Shown here in pieces: positions 7,520-58,233 of a stretch of 64,000 nucleotides of DNA. The DNA is from Sminthopsis crassicaudata (lineage: Eukaryota). Below the pieces are notes generated by a model. That model was given only the letters and a program-made list of their open reading frames with translations, did not search any database and had not been told where the DNA came from. The translations under genes and the position numbers were made by a program. Position 1 is the stretch's first letter. Each line of letters opens with the position of its first letter. The stretch is taken from positions 344,797,765 to 344,861,764 of the forward strand of contig NC_133620.1 in assembly GCF_048593235.1 (NCBI RefSeq), written 5' to 3'.

Positions 7520-7615
7520 TTATAAGGACAGAAACTAATTTTCATTTTTGTATCTCCAGTTCCTAGCATAGTACCTGGCACACAGTAGTAGATGCTTAAT
7601 AAGTGGTTGCTTGAT
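7520..7615 (+). mobile_element. LINE-2 3' end fragment
   Basis: TTTGTATCTCCAGTTCCTAGCATAGTACCTGGCACACAGTAG...GCTTAATAAG, the typical L2 terminus. Confidence 0.65.
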
Positions 7616-7624
7616 TGTATCCTT

Positions 7625-7810
7625 GGTAAAATAGCTAGTATTTTATCATACTTTCAGGTTTGCAAAGCTTTGGTTTACATATGTTAACTCATTTGATTCT
7701 CATAACAGCCCTTGGAGATAGGTACAGATGAGGAAACTGAGGCTGAGAAAACAAAGTATCTGAGCAAACATTTGAATTCAGATCTTCCTGATGCCACAGT
7801 ACAACAATAT
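7625..7810 (-). mobile_element. MIR/CORE-SINE fragment
   Basis: CORE motif ACAGATGAGGAAACTGAGGC with flanking CATTTGATTCTCATAACAGCCCT. Confidence 0.65.
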
Positions 7811-25713: not shown

Positions 25714-25890
<177 letters not shown>

Positions 25891-26884: not shown

Positions 26885-27208
<324 letters not shown>

Positions 27209-29110: not shown

Positions 29111-30208
29111 CTAAGTAAGGCTATTAGCCTTTTTGGACTAAGGCAAGTAAGCTGGCTGTGTCCTCTTTATTTGGAATGGTCAGTATTAATTGCTAGCTCA
29201 TAGACATTAGAGTAATATATTAGTTTTCTTACTGGTCTTCCCTTTCCCCTACTTTCCAATCCAAACTGAATTATATTTTGAGTAATTTTCCTATTATAGT
29301 TGATCACTTTCTTAAAAATTTCAGTGGCTTTCTATTGCCAGTTGAATGAAATCTAAACTTTATCTTGCTATTCAAAACTTTCTAGCCTTTTACCTCTTAT
29401 GAGTATTTTTAAGAATATACTTTGCTTGATTCCAACTGTGCTACTGTTCTCCTGAATATGTCCTCTCTACCTCCTTCCAAATACTACTCCTCGCCCGTGT
29501 TCCAGGGGAAATGATAGTTTCCTCCTTAGTTATCTCATAGCACTTTGTACTTCTCCTCTATACTTATACATTACCTCATTTAGTCTATATTTTAGTTTGT
29601 CTGTCATCATCTGTGCTATTTAGAATCCACAGGAAAGCTTGTATCTGTCAGTGCCTAACACAGAGCCTTGCACAGAGTTACCTGCATAATAAATGTCTGT
29701 TAAATTGAAATGAAGTCAGCATTGTTCTAAGTAATATTCTTTGCTTCCTGAATTGATACTGTTACTTTGGTGTGGGGGTGAGTACAGAATATTGAGGAAG
29801 ACCTGGATTGGTGGTATGATGTTTATGTTGATGTCTTGATCTAAGATAAGTACCCAACTTTTCTTATTGAGGCCATGCTATTTGTAAGTCCCTCCTTAGA
29901 AGGAGGTCAAATAAAATACTAGATATAAAAAATCGTAATAGTACAAGATACTGCTCACTCTTGAGTATCTATAGTAGTAATAGTGGCAATGAGAGCATGC
30001 TGTTTCCCCTTTGGGGGATGACCTCCCCAAATTTCAAAAGCTTATAGAAGTTCTTTTCCCTGAAATTACATATTGAAATTGCACTGAATGTTTTCCCTCT
30101 TTCCAGCTCATCTTTGGGTTAAAGGGAGGCAAGAATGAATACATCTGATTAAAGCAGTAGCTGACAAGTCCAATATGGGCAGCAATAGTATTTAAGCTGA
30201 ATCTGTGA

Positions 30209-30349
<141 letters not shown>

Positions 30350-30520
30350 GTCCCCACACCCCGCACACTTGGGGGACTCTTTCAACATCCAGCAGAGGAG
30401 GGAGGCGACATTGGCGTCTTCATCGGAGGCAGGCCGGGGGAGGGGAGGGAATTCCTTTATTTCCCGTTAGCTCTTTTTAATGAAGGGCTAACAATTCCAA
30501 ACCTTAGACTTGAACAAAAA

Positions 30521-30664
30521 NNNNNNNNNNNNNNNNNNNNNNNNNNNNNNNNNNNNNNNNNNNNNNNNNNNNNNNNNNNNNNNNNNNNNNNNNNNNNNNN
30601 NNNNNNNNNNNNNNNNNNNNNNNNNNNNNNNNNNNNNNNNNNNNNNNNNNNNNNNNNNNNNNNN
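30521..30664. other. Assembly gap in the LSM12 3' UTR
   Basis: Run of N. Confidence 0.99.
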
Positions 30665-30886
30665 TCATCTTGTTAATTTTATTTTTGAAAATACTTTGTA
30701 CCCTTCCCTCTTTGTCCTTTCACCCTTGACTTTTTTCTCCTACTCTGTTCCCTGCCATTCTGTTTTTATAAGTGGTTATACTTGCCTTCTGAGCAAATGG
30801 GAGAAACTTTGACATCTTCCGTTCTGAAATAAAAATAACAAGCTGACTGTGATATTTGTGTTGAGGCCAGAACAGCAAATAGGTGC

Positions 30887-31028
30887 NNNNNNNNNNNNNN
30901 NNNNNNNNNNNNNNNNNNNNNNNNNNNNNNNNNNNNNNNNNNNNNNNNNNNNNNNNNNNNNNNNNNNNNNNNNNNNNNNNNNNNNNNNNNNNNNNNNNNN
31001 NNNNNNNNNNNNNNNNNNNNNNNNNNNN
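30887..31028. other. Assembly gap in the LSM12 3' UTR
   Basis: Run of N. Confidence 0.99.
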
Positions 31029-31793
31029 GCCCAATCCACTTCTACTCCCCACCCCTCTCCAAAACCCCCTCTCCCCCCCAAAAAAAAAGCCCCTTAGCAA
31101 AGTAACCAACTTGGCCTAGTCCCAGAATCTCTTGCCAGCTTTTGAAGTGTTGGGTATTTGTGGATGAATGCAGGGTTTGAGGGGAGGAAGATTCATGGTA
31201 TCTTACCTTTTTTAAGTGTGTGTATTCTAGCTGTTTACTTGGGCTGGAATTTCTCATGTGTCCTGAAACTCTAGATTTCTCTCCCGTTATCCTACTTCAT
31301 GGTACTAGAAATAAATCTCAACATTCCCTGGTAGACTGGAGATACAACTGTTGATTTCTCTTGTCCTCTGCAAGGATCATCTTGCATGGCATATTTCATC
31401 TCCTGCTTGAATGGCAAACTCTTCCAAGTGACCTGGGATAATAGCCTCTTGTCCCTATCTCATTCCACCTTAAATTATCCCTACCCTTCTGGTTTCTCTC
31501 TTACTGACTTGGCAAATTTTTTAGTCCAGGAATCTTGAGTAATTTCCAGACTCCCTTTTTCTCTCTCTTTACTATCTGATGATAGTTTGGGCTCAGCAAA
31601 TAGTCTAAAAACCTAGGTGTTTCTGGAATTTAGCCCATCACTTTGGCTGGCTATGGTTAATCTGCTGAGAATTAACTATCACTCCCTTTCTCATGTGCCT
31701 CAGGGCAATGATATTGGGATGTGTGCTGTCATTTTTCCATTAGGCACAGAGTAGGTTGTGCATAGCCTTCATGAAACTGGCTAGAGTCTGGGA

Positions 31794-31930
31794 NNNNNNN
31801 NNNNNNNNNNNNNNNNNNNNNNNNNNNNNNNNNNNNNNNNNNNNNNNNNNNNNNNNNNNNNNNNNNNNNNNNNNNNNNNNNNNNNNNNNNNNNNNNNNNN
31901 NNNNNNNNNNNNNNNNNNNNNNNNNNNNNN
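31794..31930. other. Assembly gap in the LSM12 3' UTR
   Basis: Run of N. Confidence 0.99.
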
Positions 31931-31952
31931 TTTAGTATTGTTTAGCAAAAAC

Positions 31953-31958
31953 AATAAA
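31953..31958 (+). terminator. LSM12: Probable LSM12 distal poly(A) signal AATAAA
   Basis: AATAAA about 1.6 kb after the stop, followed by U/GU-rich sequence. Other AATAAA hexamers lie at 30828 and 31310. Confidence 0.55.
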
Positions 31959-34900
31959 ACCCAAATTTTTTAACCATCAGCTATGTCTCAGTGGGTTTGC
32001 GTGTGCCATGGGGTTAGGGAGGGGATTGGAGTGAAGGGGATTTAACAAGGTAGAGAGGCCCCCTTCCTTTCTTTCCCTAGAATTCCCAAGAATTTCCCTA
32101 GAATCTTTCTGGATATTTTCATGCATAATGTCTGGTTATAAGGAGAAAGTGATTTGAGAACAAGTTTATTGTGTATATACACACAAGTATAGCTTGTTAA
32201 GTTGTTTAACAAAGGCTTGAATTTCTTTGTCTCATAAGAATCAAGAAATAGTCTTCCAAGGGTAATTGGTGTTAGGTATTTAAGAGTTTGGAGCCTCCAT
32301 TTTGAATTCCAATAGAAATATGAAAAGGTTGATGTGAAGGCCAGAAAATTCAGTAAAAGAGAATCAATGAGAAAAGAGGAAAATTTAGTTCAGAGAAGTA
32401 AAATTAGAGATATTGTAGGAAGCTTTTTTCCTAAACCTTTTAGAAGATTAAGGACCAATTCATTTTTCTTCATTTTCATTGAGAATGTGTAAAGAATTGT
32501 TCAACAAGAAAGATTTAAGGTTGAACTCAGGAAATAACTCTGTTAGGTATTTCTTAATATTTGATATTAGAGTGGGTGACTAAGGTAAACTGTTAAATTT
32601 TCCTAAGAAATATAGATCCTCAGTGCTTATTTTTTTGAAAGACAAGGATTAGGCTTCCTGAAAGCTCTAGGCTGAGGTAAGTAATAATTTACAACTTTTC
32701 TGTTTGGAATAGTAGAGTTGTAGCCAGAAAGGGTGAAACAGATCTGGAAAATAGGGCCAGATTCCCTCAGGCAAATAATTTGAGACTGATACCATTCTTC
32801 AACTCTGATGCATCCTTTAAAAAGTAAGAAAGGAAGGAATTTGATACTTTTTCCGAATGTTTCTTAGTCTTTTCTCACCAAGAACATTTTTTCACTCAGG
32901 AAGTATTATGGAGTATTATGTGTTCTTTCATTGTAGTACTTTTTGGAAGAAACCAGGGAAGTGGATTTTTTTCTTCCTCAAACAAACAAAAAAACCATTT
33001 TAGCGTATATTAGGGAGACAAGACATATAGACAGATTTTAATACAATATATTATGAGTTAAAGCAATGGAATACATAGTACTATGAGGAACAGGGAGGGG
33101 GGGAATTGATTACCAAATTCAGATAGGACATGTGCTGGGCTTGGAATCTTTGGTTAGAGTAGATGAGAGTATTTTATATAAATGTTACTTGCTGAATAGG
33201 TATTGATTGAAAAAAATCTGGTGTTTTGATGAATGCTTCACAAAAATCCTCCTCTAGTGCCTTTTTATGGCATGACAGTGCCCCTACCCCCTGATATGTG
33301 TGGCTGTATCTTGGACCTGAACCTCTGGCAGGCCTATTGGTCTCCAGGGGCTTTAACTTTGGGTATTGTTAGCAGACTCTGTATTTCAACTAAACAGTTG
33401 AAGTGAGAAGCTCAGAGTTGGCTGGCCACAGAGTGATGAATTTTTTGGCCACAACCACGTTGAATACTGCTACCTCAGAGAGAAATTTGCTTTGGAGAAA
33501 GGCATATCCACATAAAAATCATGAATATTCAAATCCTGAATGAGGAATCTGAAGTCTAGATTGGGAGGAGAGAGGAGATTCATTTTGGATCTTAGTTGAA
33601 GATAACATATGTCTGAATTCAAGATTGTCAAATAGAGACATTTGGACTTGACCCTACAGATTATGCAGTGATGGGAAGTTTTTAGTGTAGGAGAGTAAAA
33701 GGAGCAACTCTTTAAAATGTTATATTGCTGTTTTTTGTTTCCTGCTATTCTTCCCCACACTTTCTACCACACAACCCCTCTCTTGCAACAAAGAAATTGC
33801 TGTGGAAAACATTGAATACATTTTGGCAGTTTTTGTTAAACATTCTCCAGTTATAGTCCCCATTCTCAACCTGGGATTTGGGGGAGAGAAGGGGAAGCAT
33901 ATTTTCATCATTGGTTCTGTGTAACTGAGATTGGTCTTTTCATTTAATCAGCATTCTGATTTTTTGTGTGTAAGGGGTATGTTTTTCATTACATTGTTCC
34001 ATGTATTTTCTTGTTTCAATATGCAATATTTTTGGGGATGAATACACAGTATGCAAGAGAAAGAAGAAACTGAAAATTTGAGACAAGATACTTAGAGTAA
34101 TAAATTAATAATGAAAATTAAGTCATTTACTAGGTATTGACAGATATGATAGAAATTAAAAAAGGAATGATAGATGAGACTTGATTGTTTTTCTAGATTT
34201 AGAGGGAGAGGAAAAGCAGAAGTCATCTATATGGAAGTTTTATGAAACTCAGTGACTTGAGAGCATACTTCACTATAGACAAAATCTTAAGGGAAAATTT
34301 GGGTGGGAATATTCGTTTTGTACATACAAAATTTGAAGTCATGGTGAGACTTGTTAGCATTTAACATTAGTTAGCAGTTTGAAGCAATGGGATTAGAGTT
34401 CAGATTATAAAATAAACTTAGTCATCAGTATGGTAGGAAGAGTGAAAAAGCCATAATGACACCTTGGGGAATGTCCATAGTGAGGATTTAGAAGGATGAA
34501 GTGGAAATAAACATCTGATCTCAGGCTGGGAAATAGCAAGAATGTTATACAGTATCTTATCTGAAATTTACCTTCCCCACTTCTTACAAATTAGGTGAAT
34601 TTAAGTAGAGAGGCTTTTTATTTGTTTTTTGAGCTTAAACTAAAATGTAAGGGAAAGTTGTCTTTCTGTCTATTTGACCTTGCATTTTTCTAACCCACTC
34701 TGTATTCCTCCACCTATACCCCAACTTCTTTTCCTTGCGGGTAATCTGACACATCCAGGAATGGCCAAGGATAAATCCAAGCCCATTGCTGAAGTTGGTT
34801 TGTTGAAAAAAACATGAGTATTTGACTGCCTCATAATAGATGGTACTGCAGAATGATCTCTGAGACCATCTCTCAGAAGATAGAAAAATTAGGATTGGGA

Positions 34901-35159
34901 GGAGAGGGTTGCTGCTTAGGTGTGTTTGATCCCTAATCAATAAGGAAGAATTGGTGAAACAAAATTTATGGGACTCTTGAGACAGTGTGATTGTTACCTT
35001 AGAGGTCATAGTGATAAATTAACAAAATATTGCAGATGAAGAAATACACCAGAGAAATAATTTGCTCCAGGCCATGCTGAATTGCATTGATTTCCTAGTA
35101 GTAGTAAATACATGAATTCTAGTAAGACTTTGTACATACCTTTAACAATCTCTTTGTGA

Positions 35160-35302
35160 GGGGCAGTTAGGTGGCACAGTGCATAGAGCACCAGTCCTGA
35201 AGTCAGGAGGACCTGAGTTCAAATTTGGCCTTGGACACTTAACACTTCCTAGCTATGTGACCCTGGGCAAGTCACTTAACCCCAGTTGCCTTGGGGGAGG
35301 GG
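35160..35302 (+). mobile_element. WSINE1-type SINE with target-site duplication and G-rich tail
   Basis: ATCTCTTTGTG at 35148-35158 and 35303-35313; tail TGGGGGAGGGG. Confidence 0.9.
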
Positions 35303-35385
35303 ATCTCTTTGTGGACAAGGTACATTGTTGCCAAATCTGAAGAATGGTTAATGATTAGATGTCCATCTGAAGGAACATATTTGTT

Positions 35386-36078
35386 CTTTTTTGTTTATTA
35401 TTATTTTGAATAGTATTGTTTTCAATTATATACGTAAAGATGTTTTCAACATTTAGTTTTCTAAGATGTTTAGTTCCAATTTTTTTTCTCCCTCCTTTTT
35501 CTTTTCCTCAATACAGCAGGCAATCTGATATAGGTTATATATATATAAAATCATTTTAAATATATTTCTGTAATACGCATGATGTGAAAAAAAATCAGAA
35601 CAAAAGATAAAAATGAGAAAGAAAAAGCAAATGACAAAAAAATTTAGTATGCTTCTATCCACATTTGGTCTCTCTGGTGTGGATGGCATTTTTCCATCCC
35701 AAGTCTTTTGTAATTGTCTTGGACCATCACATTAGAGCAGCTAACTCTATTACACAATCTTGCTGCTTCTGTGTACAATATTCTTCTGGTTTTGCTCACT
35801 TCAGCATCAGGTTGTGTAGACCTTTGCTGGCTTTTCTGAAATGAGCCTGTTCATTCTTATAAGAATAATAATATTCCTTTACACTCATATGCCATAACTT
35901 ATTCAGCCATTCTCCAGTTGATGGGCATCCACTCAGGTTCCAGTTCCTTGCCACTACAAGGAGATATATTACAAACACTTTTGCACATGTGGGTCTTTTC
36001 CCCTCTTAGATGATGTCTGGGATAAAAACCTCAATAGTGATAATGCTGATATGCAGTTTTAGAGCCCTTTGGGCATAG
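35386..36078 (-). mobile_element. LINE-1 3' fragment
   Basis: ORF MFVIYLLVVARNWNLSGCPSTGEWLNKLWHMSVKEYY (ORF2p C-terminus) plus 3' UTR. Confidence 0.85.
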
Positions 36079-36109
36079 GAACATCCCTATTTTGTTCAAT
36101 TTTTAATCA

Positions 36110-36400
36110 CTGACTTGGATAACAATGTGAATAATACAGGTAAAGAGGGCTCTTCTATATGTCACTCAAGAGTAGTGGGATGACAGCAGGGCTCAGAGGG
36201 ACCTAAATAGGCTCAGCATGGTAGAATCTAGATCAAAAAAGATGAACTTTTGAGAGGAATAAATCTTAGTTCTCTTATAAAAGATTTGGGGGCAAATGTT
36301 CAAGATGGACAGAGGTGTGGCCTGGCAGCAGCTCAAAGGAAAAAGATGCTACAATTTTCATTTATTCAACATGAGCTAAGTGGTTAATAGGAGCATCACT
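36110..36400 (+). mobile_element. CR1/L3 LINE fragment
   Basis: Degenerate ..GGGACCTAAATAGGCT..AAGATGAACTTT..AATAAATC..AAGATGG..GGCAGCAGCTCA..AAAAGAT pattern of CR1 ORF2. Confidence 0.5.
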
Positions 36401-37835
36401 AGTGGATCCTAGATTTCCTGACAGAGCTCAAAAGTAGTTTCTTATCAGAAATAGGAGAGAGATGGAGTTGTGGATAGCTTTTTAGTTGCAAAGTATCTTT
36501 AAGCATTATACAGATCAGTTCTCTCTCATTGAGGGAAAATGTTAAAGAGATAAAAGAGAGAGATAGAAGGACTGATCCAAGATCATTTATGCAGAGAGTT
36601 GGAGTACTCTAGCACTCAGATTTTTCTGATACACTGGCTAATTGGGAGGAATTATAGTAGAGGAATTTGGAGTCATGGATTCTGCTTCTGACACCTCTAA
36701 AATAATTATGTGACCTTGTCTTGTGTGACCTTAGTGCTCTAAGCAACTCTCTAAAAGCATAAAGTTGCAGAAGGGGGACCGTCCTACATTGATTAACAAA
36801 GTTTCTTCATATAGAGTTGCCATGTAGTCAGATCTGGTTCCTTTCCCCTCATATACAAATACAAATGTTCCTTTATACAAATGACAAAAAAGTATGAATT
36901 ATGAACTTATGAAGTTTGATTTTTTAAAAGTATGTATTACATTTTAGATAGTAATTAAGAAAAGTGCCCTGATTATGTCCTCTTATGAACTATAACTATG
37001 TTACAAATAAGTTGAGATTATGAATATTTTGCTCTGTACCTCTAACCCATCTTTGCCAAACATGGGAAATAATATTTCATCTTTGGGCCTCTTTAGTCAT
37101 AAATGATCATTGGTCACTGTGTTGATCAGTCTTGAACTCTTTCAAAGTTACATTCTTTATACTCTTCTGATTGTCTTCCTGGTTGTGCTAATTCTACTCA
37201 ATATCCATTCATACATTTCCTTTCAGATTAATCTGAATTCTTCATACATATCTTATGACTCAACACAATCCAATTACTTTCATATAACAGTATTTTTAAG
37301 GCATGTCCCAACTGATAGGGGACTATCTTTATTTCTTGTTCTTTGTTGTCACAAAATGCTACAAACATACGCTTTTTCCTAAGCCATCTAGAGGATAAAC
37401 ATCTCTAGTTACCTCAGTTTTTCTTCTGACTTGACTATCTCATTGCCCCTTAAAAGTTAAACCATAAAAGTTTATAGAGAAGAGTTAGATCATAGAAATT
37501 ATATAGTCTAGCTGCGTTGTTTTACTGAGAAGAAAAATTGAGATGCCCATTGAGATAAAATGACATCACAATCAAGTATATCACTAAAATGGGGATATGA
37601 AAATTACATCTTTGGCATTTTTACTTGAAAGCCCTGGGAAAATTCATTGAAAGACAGAGGTCACGTCCCTGGAAAGGATTAGGACCCAGATTTATTTACT
37701 AATTTTATTATTAAGACATGAAACTTAACAACTGAAACTCCTAAATCTTGAAAAAACTTTTAAAATCCAAAGTTATATACTAAAAAAGGAAGCATTTTTA
37801 TATGTATAATAGCATTTTTAAAAAAGTTATGTGTG

Positions 37836-37993
37836 GAGCAGCTAGGTACAATGGATAGAGCACCAGCCCTGAAGTCAGGATAACCCAAGTTCAAATGTGG
37901 TCCCAGACACTTAATACTTCTTAGCTGTGTGATCTTTGGCAAGTCACTTAACCCCAATTGTTTCAGAAAAAAAAAAAAAAAAAAAAAAAAAAA
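37836..37993 (+). mobile_element. WSINE1-type SINE with long poly-A and target-site duplication
   Basis: AAAAAGTTATGTGTG at 37821-37835 and 37989-38003. Confidence 0.88.
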
Positions 37994-38497
37994 GTTATGT
38001 GTGAAAATCAGTTTCTATTTTGCCCCACTTGCTTTTTCTCAATAAATTTCTTTGCTCATTCTGTAGGATTTTCTAAGTAAATCATTATGCCATCAACAAA
38101 TCTGCATGCTTTTATTTAACCTTGTAATAAATTATATTTGCTAACTTTCTAAATTGTCTTGTGCTTCCTTTTGAACTTCCTTTGCTTCTATATGTTTCAA
38201 AACATGATCCAGTGGTCCGGTTTTGTGCATTGTTACTACCCCATTTCATTCCCCCAATTTAAAACATAAAGAGGGAAAAAAGATTATAAATTATAAATAA
38301 GCATAGTCCAACAAATTAAATCCATGCAGTTGTCCAAAAACTGTCATTTTTTGCATTTTGAGCCTCTTGCTCACTTTATTGTAGGTCTTCTATAGACTGG
38401 GGTGGATGTTACTTGATCAGAATTGCTACATCTTTGAAAATTGTTTTTTGTGTTTCTATTTTATATGAGTTTCTTCTTCCCAGAATTCTCTGGTCAC

Positions 38498-38528
<31 letters not shown>

Positions 38529-39079
38529 TTGCTTACAGCATAATCATAGCCCTTTTAATACAAGTTAATTGATGGTTACAAATTAGTAGCAACTCTACTT
38601 TTGGCATGAAGTTTGTTTTCCTTTCAGGTATTTCCTTTCTGGTATCATCATCATCTTCCTCATCCCCAGTATTCTTTTTATCAATTTTTCTCCCTGTTGA
38701 GTTGGACATATTTCTGGACCACACTGTGTATATGCCTGTGTTCACGTGTTGATTTCAGATAAGAATAAGGTTCATCCAATGCCACCTCCCCTCACTCTTT
38801 CCTCCATGTTTGTTTATTCTTAAAACTTTCTGAGAAATAGTAAGTTCTAGTCCTTTTTCCTCCTCACATTCTTATTTCTTTCTTTAAAACCCTAAGAACA
38901 GAATCAACATCCTCAAATCCTCTTTTTCTTTTTTAATTCCCTCACTGCCCTTTGAAGACATTGAGATTGTGAAGGAACACATTTCTTTTTCTCCATTAGA
39001 ATGTTAGCACTGTCTTATCATTATATAGCTCTTTCTAATTGCGCAACTAAATTTGACTTTCTTGATTTCTTTCTAACTC

Positions 39080-39720
39080 TTGTGTTCATATTTTACTAAG
39101 TATTTTTTTCATCAGAAAGGCTTGAAAGTCATAATTTATTAAATATTTATTTCCTCCTCTCCCTCCAATAGGATTATATTCGGCCATGGGTAAATTATTC
39201 TTGTTTGTGCATCTGTGTCATTGACCTTTTTAAATAACTATTCTAGAATTTCTAATTTTTAGTAGAAATTGCTGGGGTTTTTGTAATCTTGACTGGTTAT
39301 TTTGGTATTTGAATTGCTTTTTGCTGGATGACTGCTGTGGTTTTTATTTGACATGGGAGTTCTGGATTTTGGCTATGATCCTCCTGGAACTTTCCCTTTT
39401 GTTTTTTCCTTCAAAAGGTGATAAGTGAATTTTTCTATATTTACTTCCCTTCTGATTCTAATAAATCTGGACAGTTTTCATTTATGATTTTTTTGAAATG
39501 TGTTTAAATAAAATCACTGTTTTCAGAGAGTTCGGTGATTCTAAATTTATCTTCTTGCCCTGATTTTCAGATTAATTCGTTTTTTCTTTGATATCAGGTA
39601 ACTCATTATTTCCCCCTTTTTTCCAATCCTTTGACTTTGTTCTAATATTTCTTGCTGTTTTATGCAGTCATTGATTTGTTTAGTGCATTCTAATTTTACT
39701 ATTTGTAATTTAGAAGAGTT
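39080..39720 (-). mobile_element. Old LINE-1 ORF1 fragment
   Basis: KQQEILEQSQRIGKKGEIMSYLISKK..EDKFRITELSE resembles marsupial ORF1p (..EIIKQNQK..KYLIGKTTDLENRSRRDNLRIIGLPE, from recall). Confidence 0.65.
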
Positions 39721-41968
39721 TGCCACTTTAATCCATATCATTGATAAAAATATTGCACAGGACAAAGACAAAATATACTGTTAGAGAAGAAAATAACCTC
39801 CAGTTGTGATTGATTTATTAACACTTTGGATAGAGTTTATTAAATTATGACTCAACTTGACTCTTGGCATGTAGTCTTGGGGAATAAGAGTTGTCAAATT
39901 GCTTTGCCCGAATCAATGAAATATATCTCTAGTGTTCCTGTTTTACTAGTCTGATAGTAACCCTCTCAGAAAAGCAAATAAGATTAGTTTCACATGACTT
40001 ATTCCTAGTAAATCCATGCTGAGTTTTAGTATTTCTCTTACCCATTTTTTTGAAAAGGACATTTACTTCTAATCTTCAAAGATCTTTGCCTTCTTATCTG
40101 CAATTTCTTTTAATATCCTACAATGCATTTGTCTTCAGGGTCTGTACTAATTAAAAGGGGTAAGGTGCACGTTTACTGGTTTTTTTTCTCCAACTTCAGG
40201 CTCTCTCAAATTCATAGCATCATAGTATTTGAAATTAGAAGATATATTGGAGATCATCTAGTTCAATCTCCTTATTTCATTGTTGGAGCTCAGAGGAAAA
40301 AGATTCAGAAGGTAGGTCACATAATAAGTAAGTAAAGCCAGAATTAGAACCAAATCTTCTGACTCCAGATCCTTTATATAATCAGAAAGCTCTGCAAATG
40401 TTCACTACTCATTAAGATGTCTTTGGGGATTCAAGTGATACAGCAAGTGATAACTGTTTCTCTTTTCCCTCCTTTAAAAATTCATTATGCTGAAGTCTAG
40501 GTCTTTTACAGAGGGCAGGGTTTAATGTCACAGTAAACTCTCTTGCTTTGCCTTTTTCTTCATTGGTGATGGTTGTGTTGTTCGTTAAACATATTTAGTA
40601 GGTTGGGAGCTGTGAGGGATTTTTAATATTTTCAGAAATCTACGCTGAATAACCATAGCATAGGAAGATAAAGAAACTTAGAAAAGAGATCTAAAAGATA
40701 TAAGGGAAACAAATGGATTTATTTTCCAGGGCAAGACAGAGAAGCTGCCATCTCCTTAAACATTTGGGCCTTCCCCTTTAACAAGGTAACTTTGCTCCCA
40801 TTCAAGATATAGCTGGCTCCTGAAAAAACAAGGGGACAGAAGAGTTCCTTTTTGACTCCTCTTCTTCTTCCTAATACTTATACAAAGACCTAAGGGTTGT
40901 AAGTTGGTCTAGTGACTTATAAATGGTGATGGATTTCTTTGGTAGCTTAGTCAGATGGCTTTCATCTTTAAAAAAAAAAAATATTTCCTTGAGTAACTTC
41001 CTTGAGCAAAGCAATTGGGCTTCCAACTTCCCTGCTTTTCTCCTCAACATAATCCTGTATTTAGTTTTTATTCATTTTACATAAGAAATTTTGTTCCGAA
41101 ACATTTTATGATATGCTTGGTGTTGCACAGCTAATAAGTGTTGGACAAGGATTTGAATCTAGGCCTTCCAGTTCCCAATTCAGTGTTCTTTTTATTGTGC
41201 TACAATTGCCTTTCATAGAATATGCCATAATAGAAAGGCATTAGATTTAGATACTTATTACCTTTGTGACTTTGGGCAACTATCACCTCTTGGTGCTTCA
41301 ATTTCTCTCCTTAAAATCAGGGGGAGAACTAAATAATTTCATTTTCCTTCTGGTTCCCTTCTTAATCATTTTTATTGCAATAGAAAGTAGAAAACATTTT
41401 TAATGTATTGGCTTATCCAAATCTCCTTTTCATTGTATTTTGTCTTTATTGAATTCCCTTCTTTGCCTTTTTGGAAGTTATTCCTGCCATGAGGTCGGGA
41501 TCTTGCTATAGTCCAAATAGGCTGTTACTATTTAACTTTTCTTTTTGAAGTGATTGAGTGTGGGATGTCAGTAAAGAGATGGAGAAAGTGCTGCTTCTAG
41601 AGCCTAAAACATGTTACTGAAATAGGCAGAGGTTGTAGCACCAAGAATGACTCAGAACCTCATATAATAAGGGAGGAGGAATCTTTTTACTTGTCTCTTT
41701 AAACCAAGTGGAGTTAAGGAGAAGATGCTGGCAGTTTCCTCCTGGAAGTCTGATTAGCCTCAGATCATTGAGGCCAGAACAAACATAGGAAAGGTTCATT
41801 GATTTCTCTCTTTCCCCTTCTCAATCTGAGCTCTGTTGGGACTAAGCAAATTAGCAGACACTTCGGAAGATGGCAACAAGGAGTCTTGATCAAGGAAGTA
41901 AAATTCCTGGATCTCTTGATGCCATGGTTTCCTTTTTCATGGCAAATTTTTCCTAATTTAGACCACAT

Positions 41969-42225
41969 TGATGAAGTAGATAGAGGACTGGGCCTGAAGT
42001 TAGGAAGACCTGAATTCAAATCAGGCCTCTGATTCTTACTGACTAGTGTCATGCTGGGCAAGATACTTAACCTCTGTTTGTCTCAGTTTCCTCATCTCTG
42101 AAATGAAGATAATAGTAACACCTACCACCCAGCGTTATTGTGAGGATCAGATGAGATAATATTTGTAAAGTACTTAGCTCACAGTGCCTGGCACATAATA
42201 GGTTCTATGTAAATGCTTGCTATTG
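41969..42225 (+). mobile_element. Near full-length MIR-like CORE-SINE
   Basis: tRNA-like head, CORE CTCAGTTTCCTCATCT..AAATG, and tail GTGCCTGGCACATAATAGG..TAAATGCTTG. Confidence 0.8.
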
Positions 42226-42265
42226 TCATCGTCATCATCATCGTCGTCATCATCATCATCATCAC
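42225..42265. repeat. (CAT/CGT)n trinucleotide microsatellite
   Basis: gtcatcgtcatcatcatcgtcgtcatcatcatcatcatca. Confidence 0.9.
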
Positions 42266-42348
42266 TATTATAATAATTATTGTTATAGGTGGGTAATGGA
42301 GTTATGAAGAAGAGAAGTGTGGGGTAGGGACCCTAGTTCATTACTGAT

Positions 42349-42353
<5 letters not shown>

Positions 42354-42398
<45 letters not shown>

Positions 42399-42416
42399 TT
42401 TTTTTTTTTTTTTTTT
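42354..42416. repeat. (CT)n plus poly-T microsatellite
   Basis: Direct reading. Confidence 0.9.
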
Positions 42417-42569
42417 GTTCCCTAGTGTCAGCAGACATTTTGAGGGCCAGGGTGGAGAGATGAGATGTTCAGTTTCCTCCAAGTCTCAGGCAATATTGAT
42501 AACCGTCTGGCCAGTGGGGTCCCGAGCCTATTTCCCCTTCCCTCAGTGGGCTTGGAGGCTGGTGTTGCC

Positions 42570-43112
42570 ATGGTGATGAATTTTCTTCTTTTGGTGTGGC
42601 AGCAAACCCTATATTGGGGTGGCTATCTTACTCAGGGCTATAGCAACAACTTGTCCTGTTTTCTGCTCTTTGCCAAGCTCCTAGGACTGTATTCGACAAT
42701 TGACGGGGATGCAGCTTCCTTGGCCTTCCCCTTGAAGTCACTGATGGGCCCTGGCTCTTGGAAGCTGAGCTACAACAACTTTCAACAACCTGACCAGGAG
42801 CTCCTTTGAAGGGCTGTGGAGACTTTGGGCACTGCTACCCCACAGTGATCTTATAGCCTCCACCCCCAGAGGCCTCTGGCTTAGGCTTGGATCAGCTCCG
42901 GAGCTACAACTGGCACATCTATTTCCCACCTGACTTTTCTGAAGTTCTGGGCTCCTTTGAAAGAGCTGAACCTTGTGTACAATTTCCTCAGAGCCCTGAA
43001 CACTGAGCATTTGTAGAGATCCTGGAACTTTTTGACCTGAGCCATTAACCAATTGGTTATATTAAAACTTGGCATTTTTTAGGGGAATGGGCTGAGGTCT
43101 TGACCTTTCAAT
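42570..43112 (+). pseudogene. Decayed gene for a secreted or membrane leucine-rich-repeat protein (signal peptide, LRRNT, about 5 LRRs)
   Basis: Mosaic translation across frameshifts: MVMNFLLLVWQQTL/GVAILLRAIATTCPVFCS..*DCIRQLTG/GLPLEVTDGPWLL/KLSYNNFQQ/LTRSSFEGLWRLWALLPHSDL/SLHP/EASGLGLDQLRSYNWHIYFPPDFSEVLGS/LKELNLVYNFLRALNTEHL/EILELFDLSH/NQLVILKLGIF/RGMG*GLDLS. Confidence 0.8.
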
Positions 43113-46100
43113 AGGTGTTTTTATTTCTTTCCCTAAATTAGTTGAAATATTCCATTTCAAGAAAGAGTTGGACACCTGCCACAGGCATTTGGTTCCAGTT
43201 TGCAAACAATCCCTCTTATACAAATATGACTTTGTAGAAGTGTTTGGAATACAGTCCTGCCATTGTAAATAGCAAATTTTAAATAATGAGGGGTCTGGAT
43301 CTCTGGCAAGATCAGCACTGATGTATTGTGCTGAATACTATAAACAAAGAAGGATCTTTCAGGTTTGAGATCAGAGGTAGTATATATAGGTAGAAAGATA
43401 TGTCAGAGGCATGACCCTCTTTGCCTCCTCCAGTTCAGTTTTAGTGGTTGTCAGACAATAAACAGTAAATACCTGCTCTATGGCAGGCATTGTGCTAAGT
43501 ACTGGGGACAAAGAAAAGCAAGGAATCCCTGCTCTTCTATTCACATTAATGAAACAATATGAAAACTGTAGAAATAGAGATAACATGAATTCAAGATAAT
43601 TAGTAAAGAGGAGGGACTAGCATCAAGGGAAAGCAAGAAAGGCTAAGAGTGGTAGAGGGAGAGCATTCTGGCTGCTTTTCCACTTCTGTTTTAAGAGCAC
43701 AAAAGCTAATAAACAACTCCCTCAATTCCTCCCATCCTCTGCACTTCTGACCCAGTATTATGACTAATATAAGATGCCAAAATCCATCCAAAGCCTGCAA
43801 AATTTCCCAAGATTGGGTTTCCTCTTTGGGGAATGCAGGAAGTGAGCAGAAGAGATAGCATGCAGCACATGTGGATAGGGTTTCCAAGAAAGCCTGTATT
43901 AACATTTCCCACTGCAGCCTTGCAAATCTTTAGGATTCATAGGACAAAGTTCCTTGGCCTCCATTAAGGGCCCTATGATTTGGGGGGGGGGGGGGAAGTG
44001 AAGTCTGAGCTTGTAGATGTCCAAAGAACAAGTGCTTTTAAGTTCTATTTTGACTTGCAAGTTGATGACTTAACTTTTTTATTGCTCCATCTGCAGTTCT
44101 GTCCTCCAAATTTGAATTGGGTTTGGGTTTCAGGAGAAATAAACTTGTTGGAGAATGGTTTCTTTTTGTTGTCCCTTTTCTAGTGTGGGGAGTAGAAGGA
44201 ATCCCGAGTTTGGAAAGTGATTGTTATTTGTTATCACCTGCTCATCTGCGCCACCCTCCCATCTTCCCTGTCTGCCTACATTTCCAGTTGTCTTACATAA
44301 TGTAGTCATACCCATACCATACCCACTACTCAGTGCCCCAAATGTTCAAACTATGACCTGGTGATTTAGAATAAAAATGATTGCTTATTGTCTATCTGAT
44401 GCACAAAACATTGCTCTAGAAACTGAGGAACACAGGAAAAATGGAGACATTGCTCTTATACATCTTGGGGAGATAGTCATTTAAACAGATGCAAAGCAGG
44501 ATATAAGTGTCTTGAGAAAGGTAGAGGCACAGCAGCGGCAAAAGTACAGAAACCGGAAATATTGGGGACAAGGTTACATGATGGAAGCATGGGACATACG
44601 AGGGAAATAAGCATGAAAGAAGAATGCTACATGTATATCTTACATCAAATTGCTGTCTTGCAGGGGGGAGGATTTGTCTTTACATCTAACTGGAAAAAAT
44701 ATTAAAGTAAAGAGGATGAGTGCTAAACTGACACTGACCTTGAAGCTTTTTAAGCAAGGAAGTAATGTGATGGGGACTTTGCTTAGGAATATCCATAAGA
44801 TAATACTAGAAGAGATATTGGAGGTTGTCTAGTTCAACTTTCTCAGTTTATGGATAATGCAACCTCTGAAGCTCTGAAGATAAAGTTGCCCTAAGGTCAT
44901 ATAGGCTGTAAAGGGTTTGAAACTCAGATGTGGGGATTCCAAATATAGCTCATTTCTATTGCCTCTGATCTGCCTTGCAACTGTCAAGGGTTGACTGGAG
45001 GCAAGGAGACCAGGAGATGTTATTTAGAATAGTCCAGGTGAGATGCTTTGAACTCAAGGGATGACAGCAGCAGTGTTGACAAAACTAGTGAGTAGAAGGT
45101 GGATTTTGAGAGAGAAGGCTTTAAGGAGAAGGTGCAGTTAATATATATTACTCTTAAAAAAAAAAAATTTGGATTGATGACATCTTTTGTTTTTTACAAG
45201 GCCTATATTTTCCCCTAGATCTCTTCCTTTCCCAGAAAGCCATCTTTTTAAAAAAGATTTTTTTTTTTAAGAGAAAAAAATTGAAGCAAATCAGTATATA
45301 GAAAAAAAATGACACTGGTGAACTGTCTCCTTCGCACATATATCAATAAAATGGAAGTAATAGACTACTATCAGCAGCAGGTGGTGAAATGATTAGAACA
45401 CTAGGCCTGGAATCTGGAAAACTTGATTTCAGAATCTTGCCTCGGGTACTTTTTAGCTCTGTGATCTTGGGCAGGTCACAACTTCTGCCTTAGTTTCCAC
45501 ATCCATCAAATGGGGATAATAGGACCCACTCTAGGTTAGGACCAAATGAAAGCATACCTGTACAACAACACAGTGCCTGGGAAATATTAAATGTGATATA
45601 GATTCTTGTTTTCTCCCTTCAGGCTGTCATTAAGATAGTTTTATTTTGCTGTGTAAATAGAACATCTGAAAAGGCTAGCAGAGTTCTTAGAAGCTGATAG
45701 GAAAGCTATAAAATAGCATATCATTTTCATTTTCCAGTATTTCTCCTCCTTTAAGAGAAAAAAAAGAAAAAATAATCAAAACTAACCACATCAGCTGAGA
45801 TCAGTATATCAGTTTTTTACACTCACAGTATTCCGCCTCTAAAAAAGAAAGGAGTTTTTTGGTCATATCCCTTCTTCAAAATCAAACTTGGGTCCTTGTA
45901 ATTGGTTTTTCCCCCATACTGTATGTATGTTCATAGTTGTGCATGTTGCTTATCTACTTCTGCTTATTTGCATTATGCTAATCTAGGCTTCATAGCTATC
46001 CTTTTTTATGGAGCAGCAAAATTCCATTACATTCATGTCATTTTGTTTTACCTGTGCCTCAATTGATGGCCACCTCATTTATTTCCATTTATTACTTGTG

Positions 46101-47079
46101 CAAAATTTTTGATGTATATTCAGACCTTTGATTTTGATCTTGAGATAGGTGCCTAGTAGTGGTACATGGAAATATCAAAGGGCATACAGTTTGGTCAATT
46201 CTTAACACATTTCAAAGTGCTTCACAGAGTGGTTGAGCTAGGTCCCAGATGCACTAACAATCTAGGCTTCTTTTTCCACGATTAAGAATTATAAGGGATA
46301 AAGGATCTGAAGGAGGTGGAAGAGTCCTGCCCAACCTTGGGTGTGAACGGGGCCACAAATAGGGGACCGACCTTTTCGGGGCATAAAACCAGGGTTAGGT
46401 AAGGCTGGGTGAACGGAGCGAATAGTGAATGAAAAGGGCCAGTTTTAGCACTGCTAGTGTAGCTTGCCCACCCGGACTTTACGGTTGTCCGGTAGGAGTC
46501 GGTGTATCTGGGAGGGACCTTGGAGGTCGAGTTCATTAGGCAAGGACTTGAGAGGAGAATTGATTTGCCCACCTCTATATGCTTACTAAATTTTCAAAAG
46601 TGCTGGAAGAGAAGGAAATTTGAACCCAGAATCTTGGTAGTTTGACCTGAAAGGACCAAAAGGTCCTCTTCTCCCAAACTCCTAATTTTACAGATGGGGA
46701 AACTTGAGGCTCAGAGAAGGGCGAGACCTCCCTCCTTCCAATGTGCAATGCTGAATATATTTGCATTCTCGAATCTGGATTTAAAATAAGCAGTCTACAG
46801 CTGCTCAAACCAAACACGGAAAACTAGCAACGTGGGAAGAAGCCGAGCTGCGCTTTGTCTCCGCCGACGGACGTCCCAGACGCACCTCCCCTCGCCAGCC
46901 GGAACCACGTGTTGCCCGGTGTAGGTCGGGACTGGGCTCAGTTTCCGGTCGGAAGAGAGAAGCCGGCGGCCCCGGAAGCCTCCGTTCGCGTTCCCCCGTC
47001 ACCCTTTCCCTCCCGCCCTCGCTGCGCGCTCCGGAGCGAGGCCGAGGTCGAGCCCGAGTGCCGTCTGTCCTTCCCCAAG

Positions 47080-47216
47080 ATGGCGGCAGGTCCGGGCCGG
47101 CGGCGGCGGCTGCTGCAGCTACTTATGCAGTTCGGGTCGGTGCTGCTGACGCGGTGTCCATTCTGGGGCTGCTTCTGCCAGCTTATGCTGTACGCCGAGC
47201 GGGCCGACGCGCGCCG
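47080..47216 (+). CDS. TMEM101: TMEM101 coding exon 1 (137 nt)
   Basis: MAAGPGRRRRLLQLLMQFGSVLLTRCPFWGCFCQLMLYAERADAR(R); donor GTGAGC. Confidence 0.97.
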
Positions 47217-47837
47217 GTGAGCGAGCCGGCTCGGCCACCGTAGGCGGGCGGAGGGAGATGGGGCGGTGCAGGGAAGTAGGGGGTGGGGCGAGGGTGGGAA
47301 GGAGCGGGACGGCCCGGGAGGAGGCGGACGGGCACCCCGCTGAATACCGAGAGGAAACTCCTACTAGGGCTACTATGGGATAGTGCGTGGGACCGCAGCA
47401 AGTGCCCTAGGGAGTGTGCTGCTTTCTAACTGGGAGAGGCGCTCTTGCTCGGGATTGAGTCCATATTGGGTGTCCCGAGGGGGGGAGTGGCCATAGAGGC
47501 CTTTCCGCACGGGAGCAAGCAGTTCTGGGATCTTGCGCTTAAGGCGGGGAACCTTTGCATTCCCCGCGCCCCCGCTTAGCACGGCGCGGACGCCCGGAGG
47601 CGCTCTTAAACCCTTGCGGACGGACCTTGGGGGCACCGCACGTTTGGGAACTGGTTTGGTGGGGTGGGAGGTGGAGGGAGGATGGAGACGGGGCGGAGCC
47701 GCGGGGCAGCGCCTCGCCGCGGGCACACCTGTAGCGCCTGGCTCCTATGAGGCGCGGCGGTGCTGGGGAGGACCTCGGCGCACACGCGCTGCCGGGCGTG
47801 CCACGGGGCCCATCCGGCCGCTCTGCTTGTCCTTCAG

Positions 47838-56677: not shown

Positions 56678-57753
56678 CTTCAGAGGAGGAGGTGATGAGA
56701 GCATTGGGTACAACCCAGTCATCCTGGGCCACATCACACCTGTTACTAAGTGTCCATATCATGTGACCCAATGTTTTTACTATCCTTGACATTTAAGCCT
56801 TTCACTGTGTAATGTCAATGTCCTCCATCCCCTCCAAAAGTCTATACCAAGGTCCTCATACCTCTATGTCTCCCATATTCTACCACTATCTGCCAAGGTG
56901 TCCAATATCCATTGCTATCCTGCCCATTTGTCCTGGTCCCAATCCTCACAGTTTCTCTTCTCTGAGCTCTAACCATTCCCCATTCCCTTGTATAAGCCAT
57001 GGTGGGGCCTTCATTATGGCCCTAAAACGGCTGGAAGTTCTAGCATCTTTCAGGATCCTTTCCTTTTCTTCCTCCCAAACACAGGCCCAGCCTTCAGGGG
57101 CTCTGATTAGTCTGCACTTCTTCATTCCTGGACTGTGGCTCCGCCCTTCCTTCTCCCCATCTCACCATCTTATGCTTGTTTGCCTGCCACATTCCCCTCC
57201 CCCTGTTTAGAAGTGGCCTTGGACCCCAGGGTTTACATAGGGCAGGGTAGGTGGAGCACTGGTTGTTGGGGGTGGGCCAGAAACAGGCAGAATATTGTTT
57301 TGTCCTGTTTTTCCTTCCTCAACTGCCAGTACTTCTGAATCCAACCTTTTCTTTCCAGCTTCTTTTCTACTCCACTCATCTCTTTCTCACATGGTGTCCT
57401 GTAGCACCTACTTGTTGCCCAGTTTCCACTTTCCTGGCTTAGTTCTGCTCTTACTCTAATCTGGGAAGCATCCCACCCACTTACCCTAACAGTCAGGATG
57501 GGCCTATCAGCAGCAGGGATAGTCCCTTTTCAACCTTGCCCTCACCCTGCCCATCTGTAGGACTAAAGTTGATTGTACGAAGGCCCCATTTCTGTCACCA
57601 GGTGGCCTGTTAGGGGCCTCTCCAAGATAAGGAGTCGCATTAGTTTTGGCCCTGGCAGTCCCAACTAGTGATAATGGCAGGCTTCCGGTCGTGGTATACC
57701 AAACCCGAAATCGAAATATGTCAGTGTCGATTTCTTCCCAGGACGCCCCTCAC

Positions 57754-58233
57754 CTCGATGATGGCAAAAGGTTTGTCCGTCGAGTTATAGGTGGTCTGGA
57801 ACTGGGTAAGCCAGTGCCTCGCCTCCCCGGGGCTGGCCCCACATTCGGTCAGGAACGCCTGGATGTCCCGCTGGACCAGCGAGCGGCTGGAAGGTGGCGC
57901 GGGGGCCACGGCGGGTGGCTGCGGTGCCGGAGCGGCGGCTGGACCCGGGAGCGTAGAGGTTGCGGGTGGTCCCACTCCCGGAGGAGGCCCCTTGTCAACG
58001 GCCGCCTCTTCGGGACCTCGTTCGGCCTCCTCTCGAGGCAGCTGGGTCCGGACTCGGGCAGTACTGAGGCGGCGACCGGGGCTGACACCCCCAGATCCCC
58101 GGCGCCTGGCACTACTGCTGAATCTGCGGGCAACCCCCAGAGCCCAAAGCCGCGCACTTGACCCTGTCCCTATTCTTACTCCTGCGGCCGCTGCCTTTCC
58201 AGCCAGGGTCCGAGTCACCGGAGCTGTAGCCAT
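57754..58233 (-). CDS. NAGS: NAGS exon 1 (480 nt): mitochondrial targeting peptide, variable segment and start of the AAK domain
   Basis: MATAPVTRT...SPGRRLSTA...[44 protein letters not shown]; donor GTGAGG. Exons total 1659 nt = 552 aa plus stop. Confidence 0.97.

What the first reader, a model, noticed from the sequence alone, without database searches (positions are those of the whole stretch)
42570..43112. Unannotated fossil LRR gene between LSM12 and TMEM101: candidate unitary pseudogene
Seen in sequence: a strong-context ATG (GCCATGG, 42570) starts a hydrophobic signal-like stretch. An LRRNT-like cap follows (TTCPVFCS...DC..RQLT), then about 5 LRR units in the correct order: GPWLL/KLSYNNF, LTRSSFEGLWRLWAL, SYN...FPPDFSEVLGS, LKELNLVYNFLRAL, LELFDLSH/NQLVILKLGIF/RG. 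About 10 frameshifts and stops break it up, so the ORF track misses it. There is no poly-A tail or TSD. Inference: an ancient gene that decayed in place. From memory only, the motifs G.WLL.L..NN, F.GLW.L, P.DFS..L..L.EL.L and DLS.NQLV....G.FRG resemble an uncharacterised LRR transmembrane family of fish and other non-mammals (often auto-named IGFALS-like). I know of no such gene in the human LSM12-TMEM101 interval.
Basis: partly seen in the sequence, partly recalled or inferred. Interest (0 to 1): 0.85.

Follow-up and report, generated by a model that had tools for sequence, protein, structure and literature searches.

The report
Dead LRR receptor gene beside TMEM101
This marsupial genome keeps the broken front half of an ancient cell-surface leucine-rich-repeat gene, exactly where alligators and elephant sharks still have the working gene; it is a real but ordinary unitary pseudogene from an unstudied gene family.

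Summary
Window 42626-43089 (+) aligns colinearly, across 8-9 frameshifts and one TGA, to residues 13-170 of a 353-aa single-exon LRR membrane protein. That covers the LRRNT cap and LRR1-5. A frameshift-aware alignment scores 145-161, against 67 or less anywhere else in the window on either strand (z = 25 against shuffles).

The intact gene lies directly upstream of TMEM101 on the same strand in alligator and in elephant shark, which is the position of the relic. The family is the orthologue group of zebrafish si:ch211-237i5.4. It is kept from sharks to crocodilians and has no literature.

The 3' half (LRR6-8, LRRCT, membrane helix) is gone. Three frameshifts and this truncation are shared with Dromiciops, so the gene died before the Australidelphia radiated. 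Substitutions since then are spread evenly over codon positions, as expected for neutral decay. Platypus and an auk have no trace of the gene.

Polar bear carries an unannotated, near full-length relic with different lesions. A colugo has an apparently intact 354-aa ORF. So the loss in marsupials is independent of the decay in placentals.

Whether the relic is transcribed could not be tested. Verdict: a new member of a known kind, of moderate interest.

The parts
42570..42625 (+). Probable ancestral start codon (ATG in GCCATGG) and a decayed signal-peptide remnant (MVMNFLLLVW...)
   Evidence: Read directly. The ATG is conserved in the dasyurid L003 and in Dromiciops L008. It lies about 12-19 codons before the first aligned residue (aa 13), as expected for a signal peptide. 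The assignment is an inference, because the DP alignment starts only at 42626.
42626..43089 (+). Core of the pseudogene: colinear with residues 13-170 of the 353-aa LRR membrane protein, 37-43% identical
   Evidence: Frameshift-aware alignment and traceback; z = 25; family HMM 48.6 bits; family-specific scores.
42649..42748 (+). LRRNT cap remnant. C22, C26 and C28 are kept; C37 is lost. There is a window-specific 1-nt insertion near 42667 and a TGA at 42701-42703.
   Evidence: The insertion and the stop are absent from L003 and L008.
42749..42822 (+). LRR1 remnant (GPWLLE/LSYNN/FNNLTRSSFEGLWR), with frameshifts near 42764 (dasyurids only) and 42780 (shared with Dromiciops)
42823..42886 (+). 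LRR2 remnant, with a frameshift near 42865-42871 that is probably shared with Dromiciops
42887..42959 (+). LRR3 remnant (LDQL.RSYNWHIYFPPDFSEVLGS), with a 1-nt insertion at about 42956 shared by all three marsupials
42960..43024 (+). LRR4 remnant (LKELNLVYNFLRAL..EHL), with a 5-nt deletion near 43015 found only in dasyurids
43025..43089 (+). LRR5 remnant (EILELFDLSH/NQLVILKLGI/FRGM), with frameshifts near 43046 and 43077 found only in dasyurids. Recognisable homology ends here.
43090..43091 (+). 3' breakpoint: residues 171-353 (LRR6-8, LRRCT, membrane helix, tail) are missing from here on
   Evidence: The C-terminal half scores at background level everywhere in the window. The homology ends at the same residue in L003 and L008, while the flanking DNA goes on aligning between the marsupials.
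30254..30349 (+). Context: last coding exon of LSM12, 12.2 kb upstream of the relic
   Evidence: tblastx against the platypus and auk LSM12 loci.
47080..47220 (+). Context: TMEM101 coding exon 1 (MAAGPGRRRRLLQLLMQFGSVLLTRCPFWGC...), 4 kb downstream of the relic on the same strand
   Evidence: ORF list and TMEM101 homologues.

Best explanation
This is a unitary pseudogene that decayed in place. It is the remnant of the marsupial orthologue of an ancient jawed-vertebrate gene, represented by zebrafish si:ch211-237i5.4. The ancestral gene has one coding exon. It encodes a type I membrane protein of about 353 aa: signal peptide, LRRNT cap, eight LRRs, LRRCT cap, one membrane helix and a short basic tail. 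It sits immediately upstream of TMEM101 on the same strand. In the marsupial lineage the gene lost its 3' half and acquired frameshifts before Dromiciops and the dasyurids split, and it has drifted neutrally since. What remains (window 42570-43089) cannot encode a protein and has no demonstrated function. Shown: the homology, the synteny, the lesions, which lesions are shared, and the neutral substitution pattern. Inferred: the date of death (roughly 100-140 million years ago) and the role of the ATG at 42570 as the old start codon.
For: Alignment: score 145-161 against a background of 67 or less. It is colinear over aa 13-170 and keeps the family motifs CPxxCxC, W[LM]LDL.HNN, SF..LW, P.DFS..L.SL.EL, LE.LE.LDLS.N and G.FRGL. 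z = 25 against shuffles. The family HMM gives 48.6 bits, while shuffled and reversed controls give nothing.

Specificity: median score 120 against 120 family members, against 60 for 147 other LRR representatives.

Synteny: the intact gene is 1.6 kb upstream of TMEM101 in alligator and 3.2 kb upstream in Callorhinchus, in the same order and on the same strand.

Orthologous relics: a second dasyurid-like genome and Dromiciops both have one. All three share frameshifts at protein positions 62, about 92 and 124, and the same 3' end at residue 170.

Neutrality: window-Dromiciops differences fall 24/30/29 on codon positions 1/2/3, p = 0.66. Identity is 0.81 in the relic and 0.76-0.81 in the flanks. 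Only 20 of 33 family-invariant residues are kept.

No intact marsupial, monotreme or bird member appears among the protein hits.
Against: Only this window of the genome could be read, so an intact copy elsewhere in the same genome is not excluded. Its absence from the protein databases for all marsupials argues against one. The parent gene has no introns in its coding part, so lack of introns cannot separate an in-place relic from a retrocopy; that point rests on synteny alone. In a tree the long mammalian branch joins the family at an unresolved polytomy that also contains the nearest paralogues. Orthology therefore rests on synteny and score specificity, not on the tree. Monodelphis and diprotodont DNA could not be fetched, so 'before the Australidelphia crown' is the only dating shown.
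Confidence: 0.93

Rival explanations
1. The relic is dead as a coding gene but survives as part of a non-coding transcript or a regulatory element upstream of TMEM101. This does not exclude the pseudogene reading.
For: Eighteen public runs of the same organism hold at least half of the sampled words from the stretch. Many are contig sets of only 60-850 million letters, which is transcriptome size rather than genome size. The relic has fewer gap columns against Dromiciops than its flanks: 21 in 520 bp, against 100-239 per 500-900 bp.
Against: Those runs are flagged only as guessed RNA, and no run on record as RNA holds the relic. Base identity to Dromiciops matches the flanks (0.81 against 0.76-0.81). 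No DNA-level conservation to bear or platypus exists outside TMEM101 exon 1. The flanks contain simple repeats that inflate their gap counts.
Confidence: 0.12
2. The relic is a processed (retrocopied) or segmentally duplicated pseudogene of an LRR gene that lives elsewhere in the genome.
For: The parent family has a single coding exon, so a retrocopy would look the same as an in-place copy. Only one window of the genome was available.
Against: The position and strand relative to TMEM101 match alligator, elephant shark and the polar-bear relic. The relic is present at the same spot in three marsupials that diverged long ago. There is no poly-A tract or target-site duplication at its ends. No intact marsupial family member exists in the protein collections to act as a parent.
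Confidence: 0.03
3. The LRR-like pieces are a chance pattern in leucine-rich, low-complexity sequence.
For: Pfam finds nothing in the separate pieces and tblastn E-values are weak. An L/S-rich stretch at 31398-31706 reaches a score of 67 by chance.
Against: The score is 145-161 against a background maximum of 67, with z = 25. The pieces are colinear with a real protein over 158 residues. Similarity is specific to the family. The syntenic gene is intact in outgroups.
Confidence: 0.01

Closest known systems
Orthologue group of zebrafish si:ch211-237i5.4. It is unnamed and auto-annotated as 'IGFALS', 'slit homolog 2-like', 'reticulon-4 receptor-like 2' or 'LRRC17-like'. Example: alligator L004:7299-8360.
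   Same: The relic is colinear with residues 13-170 at 37-43% identity. It shares the LRRNT and LRR1-5 motifs and the same position and strand next to TMEM101.
   Different: The window copy is broken by 8-9 frameshifts and a stop. It lacks LRR6-8, the LRRCT and the almost invariant membrane helix ETATVLVIT..AERNRKK.
Eutherian copies of the same gene: Cynocephalus volans XP_062937341.1 ('LRRC15-like', 354 aa) and the unannotated polar-bear relic L006:6818-7796.
   Same: They form one mammalian clade with the marsupial relics (98/99 support). The bear relic sits upstream of TMEM101.
   Different: The colugo ORF is intact and keeps 80 of 106 family-invariant residues. The bear relic is nearly full length, and its five frameshifts (positions 102, 137, 200, 224, 268) are not shared with marsupials. 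The marsupial copies are truncated after residue 170.
IGFALS, the acid-labile subunit of the IGF ternary complex (PDB 7wrq); also LRRC15, LRIG1, LGR4 and TLR3 ectodomains.
   Same: These are the best solved-structure matches of the intact alligator protein (IGFALS E = 2e-61). They share generic extracellular LRR repeats with LRRNT and LRRCT caps.
   Different: IGFALS is a secreted protein with about 20 LRRs and lies at another locus. The similarity is at repeat level only, and generic LRR proteins score at background against the relic. The relic's family is not IGFALS.
Small single-pass LRR membrane proteins such as the BK-channel gamma subunits LRRC26/52/55/38. This comparison is by architecture, from my own knowledge.
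   Same: They have the same overall build: signal peptide, LRRNT, 6-8 LRRs, LRRCT, one membrane helix followed by a basic cluster, about 330-350 aa. One donkey gene model is auto-named 'LRRC26-like'.
   Different: They are not among the 60 best solved-structure matches. No functional link was tested. This is a lead for the ancestral function only.

Membership tests
TMEM101-adjacent LRR membrane protein family (si:ch211-237i5.4 orthologues) | Colinear sequence similarity that is stronger to this family than to other LRR proteins | tested here: met
   DP score is a median of 120 (74-177) against 120 members. It is a median of 60 and a maximum of 81 against other LRR representatives, and 41-65 against the nearest paralogue clusters. 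The family HMM gives 48.6 bits.
TMEM101-adjacent LRR membrane protein family (si:ch211-237i5.4 orthologues) | Position directly upstream of TMEM101 on the same strand | tested here: met
   Alligator L004: gene at 7299-8360, TMEM101 from 10001. Callorhinchus L007: gene at 10001-11071, TMEM101 from 14225. Window: relic at 42570-43089, TMEM101 from 47080.
TMEM101-adjacent LRR membrane protein family (si:ch211-237i5.4 orthologues) | LRRNT cysteine pattern C-x3-C-x-C ... C and family-invariant residues in LRR1-5 | tested here: inconclusive
   C22, C26 and C28 are kept and C37 is lost. 20 of 33 invariant positions are kept. This is what a decayed member should look like, but it is no longer a functional cap.
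TMEM101-adjacent LRR membrane protein family (si:ch211-237i5.4 orthologues) | LRR6-8, LRRCT (NPW.CDCDL) and the near-invariant membrane helix ETATVLVIT...AERNRKK | tested here: not met
   No trace in the window: the C-terminal half scores at background. The 3' half is absent in all three marsupials. The bear relic and the colugo ORF do have it. The window copy is therefore a relic of a member, not a working member.
Unitary pseudogene | Disabling lesions in a sequence orthologous to a gene that works in other species | tested here: met
   8-9 frameshifts, one stop, and loss of residues 171-353.
Unitary pseudogene | Lies at the syntenic position of the functional orthologue | tested here: met
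Unitary pseudogene | No functional copy elsewhere in the same genome | not testable with these tools
   Only the 64-kb window is available. Indirect evidence: no marsupial protein appears among family hits in 5.8 billion sequences.
Unitary pseudogene | Evolves without coding constraint | tested here: met
   Differences from Dromiciops fall 24/30/29 on codon positions 1/2/3, p = 0.66. Identity equals that of the flanks.
Processed pseudogene | Poly-A tail, target-site duplications, a location unrelated to the parent locus, loss of introns | tested here: not met
   No A-run or flanking direct repeat is present and the location is the parental one. The intron criterion is void because the parent coding region is a single exon. 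The original 3' end is deleted, so a tail could not have survived in any case.

The most novel reading that the evidence does not exclude
The gene was still working in the last common ancestor of marsupials and placentals. It has since been lost or let go many times, in marsupials, monotremes, several placental lineages (bear, horse, flying fox) and birds. Every cold-blooded jawed vertebrate examined keeps it, with an almost invariant membrane helix. On this reading the relic marks a repeated, possibly physiology-linked loss in warm-blooded vertebrates of a membrane receptor or auxiliary subunit whose function nobody has studied. The independence of the marsupial and placental decay is well supported (colugo ORF intact, no shared lesions). 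The link to physiology is pure speculation.
Probability: 0.2. Interest if true: 0.55.

Novelty: new member of a known kind. Interest (0 to 1): 0.36.

Why it matters
The finding adds a documented gene death to the catalogue of mammalian gene losses. It also gives a first evolutionary outline of an unnamed LRR membrane protein family. The family is a single-exon gene fixed next to TMEM101 since before sharks and bony vertebrates split. Its membrane helix and juxtamembrane basic motif are nearly identical from chimaera to alligator, which hints at a partner inside the membrane. The pattern of intact genes in fish, amphibians and reptiles, against relics or absence in marsupials, monotremes, birds and several placentals, tells experimenters two things. 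The function should be sought in zebrafish or Xenopus, and mammals are natural knock-outs. It also flags unannotated relics and doubtful gene models ('LRRC15-like', 'LRRC26-like') in placental genome annotations. None of this overturns a concept, because unitary pseudogenes of this kind are common.

Tried and rejected
- Pfam on the separate stop-free pieces found nothing. Plain tblastn gave only weak hits, E = 0.013 or worse. Both fail because the frame changes roughly every 50 bp.
- I searched for the missing C-terminal half downstream (43080-47100), upstream (30000-42650) and in the whole window on both strands. Only background scores came back.
- A score-67 hit at 31398-31706 looked like a possible second relic. 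It is a chance L/S-rich match.
- Platypus (L005), auk (L001) and gar (L002) intervals around TMEM101 hold no relic.
- The echidna look-up failed because the isoform was not on record. No DNA was served for an opossum-family genome, wombat or elephant. The loss therefore could not be dated within marsupials beyond Dromiciops versus dasyurids, nor within placentals.
- Nei-Gojobori dN/dS on codons paired through separate protein-guided alignments gave 0.5-0.7. I rejected this as unreliable, because register errors inflated the divergence. I replaced it with the codon-position count on a DNA alignment.
The run listings are ambiguous.
- The tree confirms a mammalian clade, but it cannot place that clade relative to the nearest paralogues because of long branches.
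- Literature: no paper holds 'ch211-237i5.4' and nothing relevant turned up for TMEM101/LSM12/pseudogene/LRR.

Full report
**Context**

The window is a marsupial locus. TMEM101 exon 1 lies at 47080-47220 (+) and NAGS exon 1 on the minus strand at 57721-58233. LSM12 coding exons lie at 4088-4225, 25765-25896, 27017-27154 and 30254-30349 (+). Window 39000-47300 is 87-88% identical (92% over 42300-43400) to a dasyurid-like assembly that encodes the Sarcophilus TMEM101 isoform (L003). Window 41038-47292 aligns to Dromiciops at 70-78% (L008). The finding sits in the 17-kb gap between LSM12 and TMEM101, 4 kb upstream of TMEM101 and on the same strand.

**The observation**

The pieces are too short and too often interrupted for standard tools. 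Pfam finds nothing in them, and tblastn gives only colinear but weak hits.

**Finding the parent gene**

I took TMEM101 proteins of other vertebrates and looked at their genomic neighbourhoods.

- In alligator, an intact single-exon gene of 353 codons lies 1.6 kb upstream of TMEM101 on the same strand (L004:7299-8360).
- Its product has a signal peptide, an LRRNT cap (CPPLCVC...DC), eight LRRs, an LRRCT cap (NPWACDCDL), a membrane helix and a short basic tail. Pfam confirms LRR_8 at E = 5e-44.
- Its relatives form a tight family that includes zebrafish si:ch211-237i5.4. The family is found in turtles, squamates, amphibians, coelacanth, lungfish, ray-finned fish, sharks and chimaera.
- The members carry a random assortment of automatic names. 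No mammal or bird is among the best 120, all at E = 1e-102 or better.
- In Callorhinchus the gene again lies just upstream of TMEM101 on the same strand. Its DNA is one uninterrupted 356-codon ORF.
- The arrangement therefore dates to the jawed-vertebrate ancestor.

**Statistics of the match**

I wrote a protein-to-DNA local alignment that allows frameshifts. It scores 145-161 for alligator, turtle and Xenopus proteins, ending at window 43089 on the + strand. The next best score anywhere on either strand of the window is 67 or less. Two hundred dinucleotide shuffles give 37 +/- 5, so z = 25.

The traceback aligns window 42626-43089 to residues 13-170 at 37-43% identity. It shows 8-9 frameshifts and a TGA at 42701. 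LRRNT and LRR1-5 map to 42649-43089.

A family HMM built from 121 members scores the conceptual translation, with X at each break, at 48.6 bits. Shuffled and reversed controls score nothing.

The similarity is specific to the family. The median score is 120 against 120 members, and 60 against 147 other LRR representatives, including giant multi-LRR proteins that offer many more chances to match.

**What is missing**

Residues 171-353 leave no detectable trace anywhere in the window.

**When the gene died**

The dasyurid-like relative and Dromiciops carry the same relic, ending at the same residue.

| Lesion | Found in |
|---|---|
| Frameshifts at protein positions 62, about 92 and 124; 3' truncation after residue 170 | All three marsupials |
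| Lesions at positions 57, 146, 156 and 166 | Dasyurids only |
| 1-nt insertion near 42667; TGA at 42701 | This genome only |

The gene was therefore dead before Dromiciops and the dasyurids diverged.

Since then the sequence has drifted neutrally. Differences from Dromiciops fall 24/30/29 on codon positions 1/2/3 (p = 0.66). Identity is 0.81 in the relic and 0.76-0.81 in the flanks.

A rough estimate puts the death at about 100-140 million years ago. It rests on two calculations:

- the drop from an expected 60-65% identity to turtle to the observed 41-44%;
- the ratio of shared to lineage-specific frameshifts.

This date is an inference with wide error.

**Other lineages**

- Platypus has a 4-kb LSM12-TMEM101 gap, and no trace of the gene is left in it.
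- An auk has a 1.3-kb gap, and it too holds no trace.
- Polar bear has an unannotated, nearly full-length relic (L006:6818-7796, residues 8-349, score 345). Its five frameshifts are at positions 102, 137, 200, 224 and 268, none shared with marsupials.
- A search with the bear's open frame found an apparently intact 354-aa ORF in the colugo. It is 47% identical to alligator and keeps 80 of 106 family-invariant residues. The same search found partial gene models in horse, donkey and a flying fox.
- The gene therefore survived into crown placentals, and the marsupial loss is an independent event.
- In a tree, the colugo ORF and the bear relic group together, the marsupial relics group together, and the two groups form one mammalian clade with 98/99 support. 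The long branch cannot be placed relative to the nearest paralogues. Orthology rests on synteny and on score specificity.

**Rivals**

- A retrocopy or duplicate is unlikely. The position and strand are those of the parent gene in six species, and no marsupial parent protein exists in the databases. The intron test is void, however, because the gene has a single coding exon.
- Chance is excluded.
- A secondary non-coding role remains open. Many small, transcriptome-sized contig sets from the same organism contain the stretch, but they are only guessed to be RNA.

**Comparison with the known**

The nearest solved structures are generic extracellular LRR proteins: IGFALS at E = 2e-61, then LRIG1, LRRC15, TLR3 and LGR4. 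The family itself has no literature.

Its most striking feature is a membrane helix and juxtamembrane motif, ETATVLVIT.TVLVTVIAAIVMAERNRKK, that is almost invariant from chimaera to alligator. This suggests an obligatory partner in the membrane, in the manner of small LRR auxiliary subunits. That is speculation from my own knowledge and was not tested.

**Verdict**

This is a new member of a known kind. Interest is moderate (0.36): it is a clean example, and it points to an unstudied, deeply conserved gene that warm-blooded lineages keep losing, but it is conceptually ordinary.

Noticed in passing
L006:6818-7796 (polar bear, upstream of TMEM101): An unannotated, nearly full-length relic of the same LRR gene (residues 8-349). 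It has five frameshifts at protein positions 102, 137, 200, 224 and 268, is 37.5% identical to alligator, and keeps 55 of 106 invariant residues.
   Followed up: yes
P0411 (Cynocephalus volans XP_062937341.1); P0414/P0415 (donkey, horse); P0431 (Pteropus alecto): Placental versions of the gene exist in annotations under misleading automatic names ('LRRC15-like', 'LRRC26-like', 'hypothetical'). The colugo ORF is intact at 354 aa. The horse, donkey and bat models are partial and look as if they were spliced around lesions.
   Followed up: partly
P0410 cluster (15 members, 245-257 aa): A truncated placental-type version of this protein is seen on hundreds of metagenome, Logan and ENA contigs (one member on 367 contigs). 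That pattern suggests host DNA contaminating metagenomes. The species was not determined and I did not pursue it.
   Followed up: no
Alignment A1, alligator residues 304-335: The membrane helix and juxtamembrane motif (C.AETATVLVIT.TVLVTVIAAIVMAERNRKK) is almost invariant from chimaera to alligator and far more conserved than the LRR ectodomain. This hints at a partner within the membrane.
   Followed up: no
L007:10001-11071 (Callorhinchus): The annotated product (337 aa) omits 19 residues, but the DNA is one uninterrupted 356-codon ORF. The annotated 'intron' looks like an artefact.
   Followed up: partly
L005:5964-10001 (platypus); L001:8737-10001 (auk): The LSM12-TMEM101 gaps are only 4 kb in platypus and 1.3 kb in the auk, with no trace of the LRR gene. 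In the auk, PYY-type hormone genes follow TMEM101 directly and no NAGS gene is called.
   Followed up: partly
L002:1-10001 (spotted gar): The gene called upstream of TMEM101 is a glycosyltransferase on the opposite strand, not LSM12. No LRR gene or relic lies in the 7-kb gap, although Amia, sturgeon and teleosts have family members. The gar copy, if any, must lie elsewhere.
   Followed up: partly
window 42226-42264 and 42354-42416: Simple repeats lie just upstream of the relic: (TCA)13, then (TC)18 running into T27. They are not a poly-A tail of the relic, because they sit 5' of it on the same strand.
   Followed up: yes
window 17397-18299 (-): Two ORFs (131 and 114 aa) look like the C-terminal part of a LINE-1 ORF2, inside an LSM12 intron.
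   Followed up: no
window 42450-43150; runs X1-X32: Many contig sets of only 60-850 million letters from the same organism contain 78-96% of the relic's sampled words. Whole-genome runs are about 3,100-3,800 million letters. This may mean the intergenic stretch is transcribed, but the runs are only guessed to be RNA.
   Followed up: partly
window 43440-43560: The stretch reads like a SINE/MIR-type repeat core (ggcaggcattgtgctaagtactggggacaaag...). It lies just downstream of the point where homology to the LRR gene ends. I recognised it from memory only.
   Followed up: no
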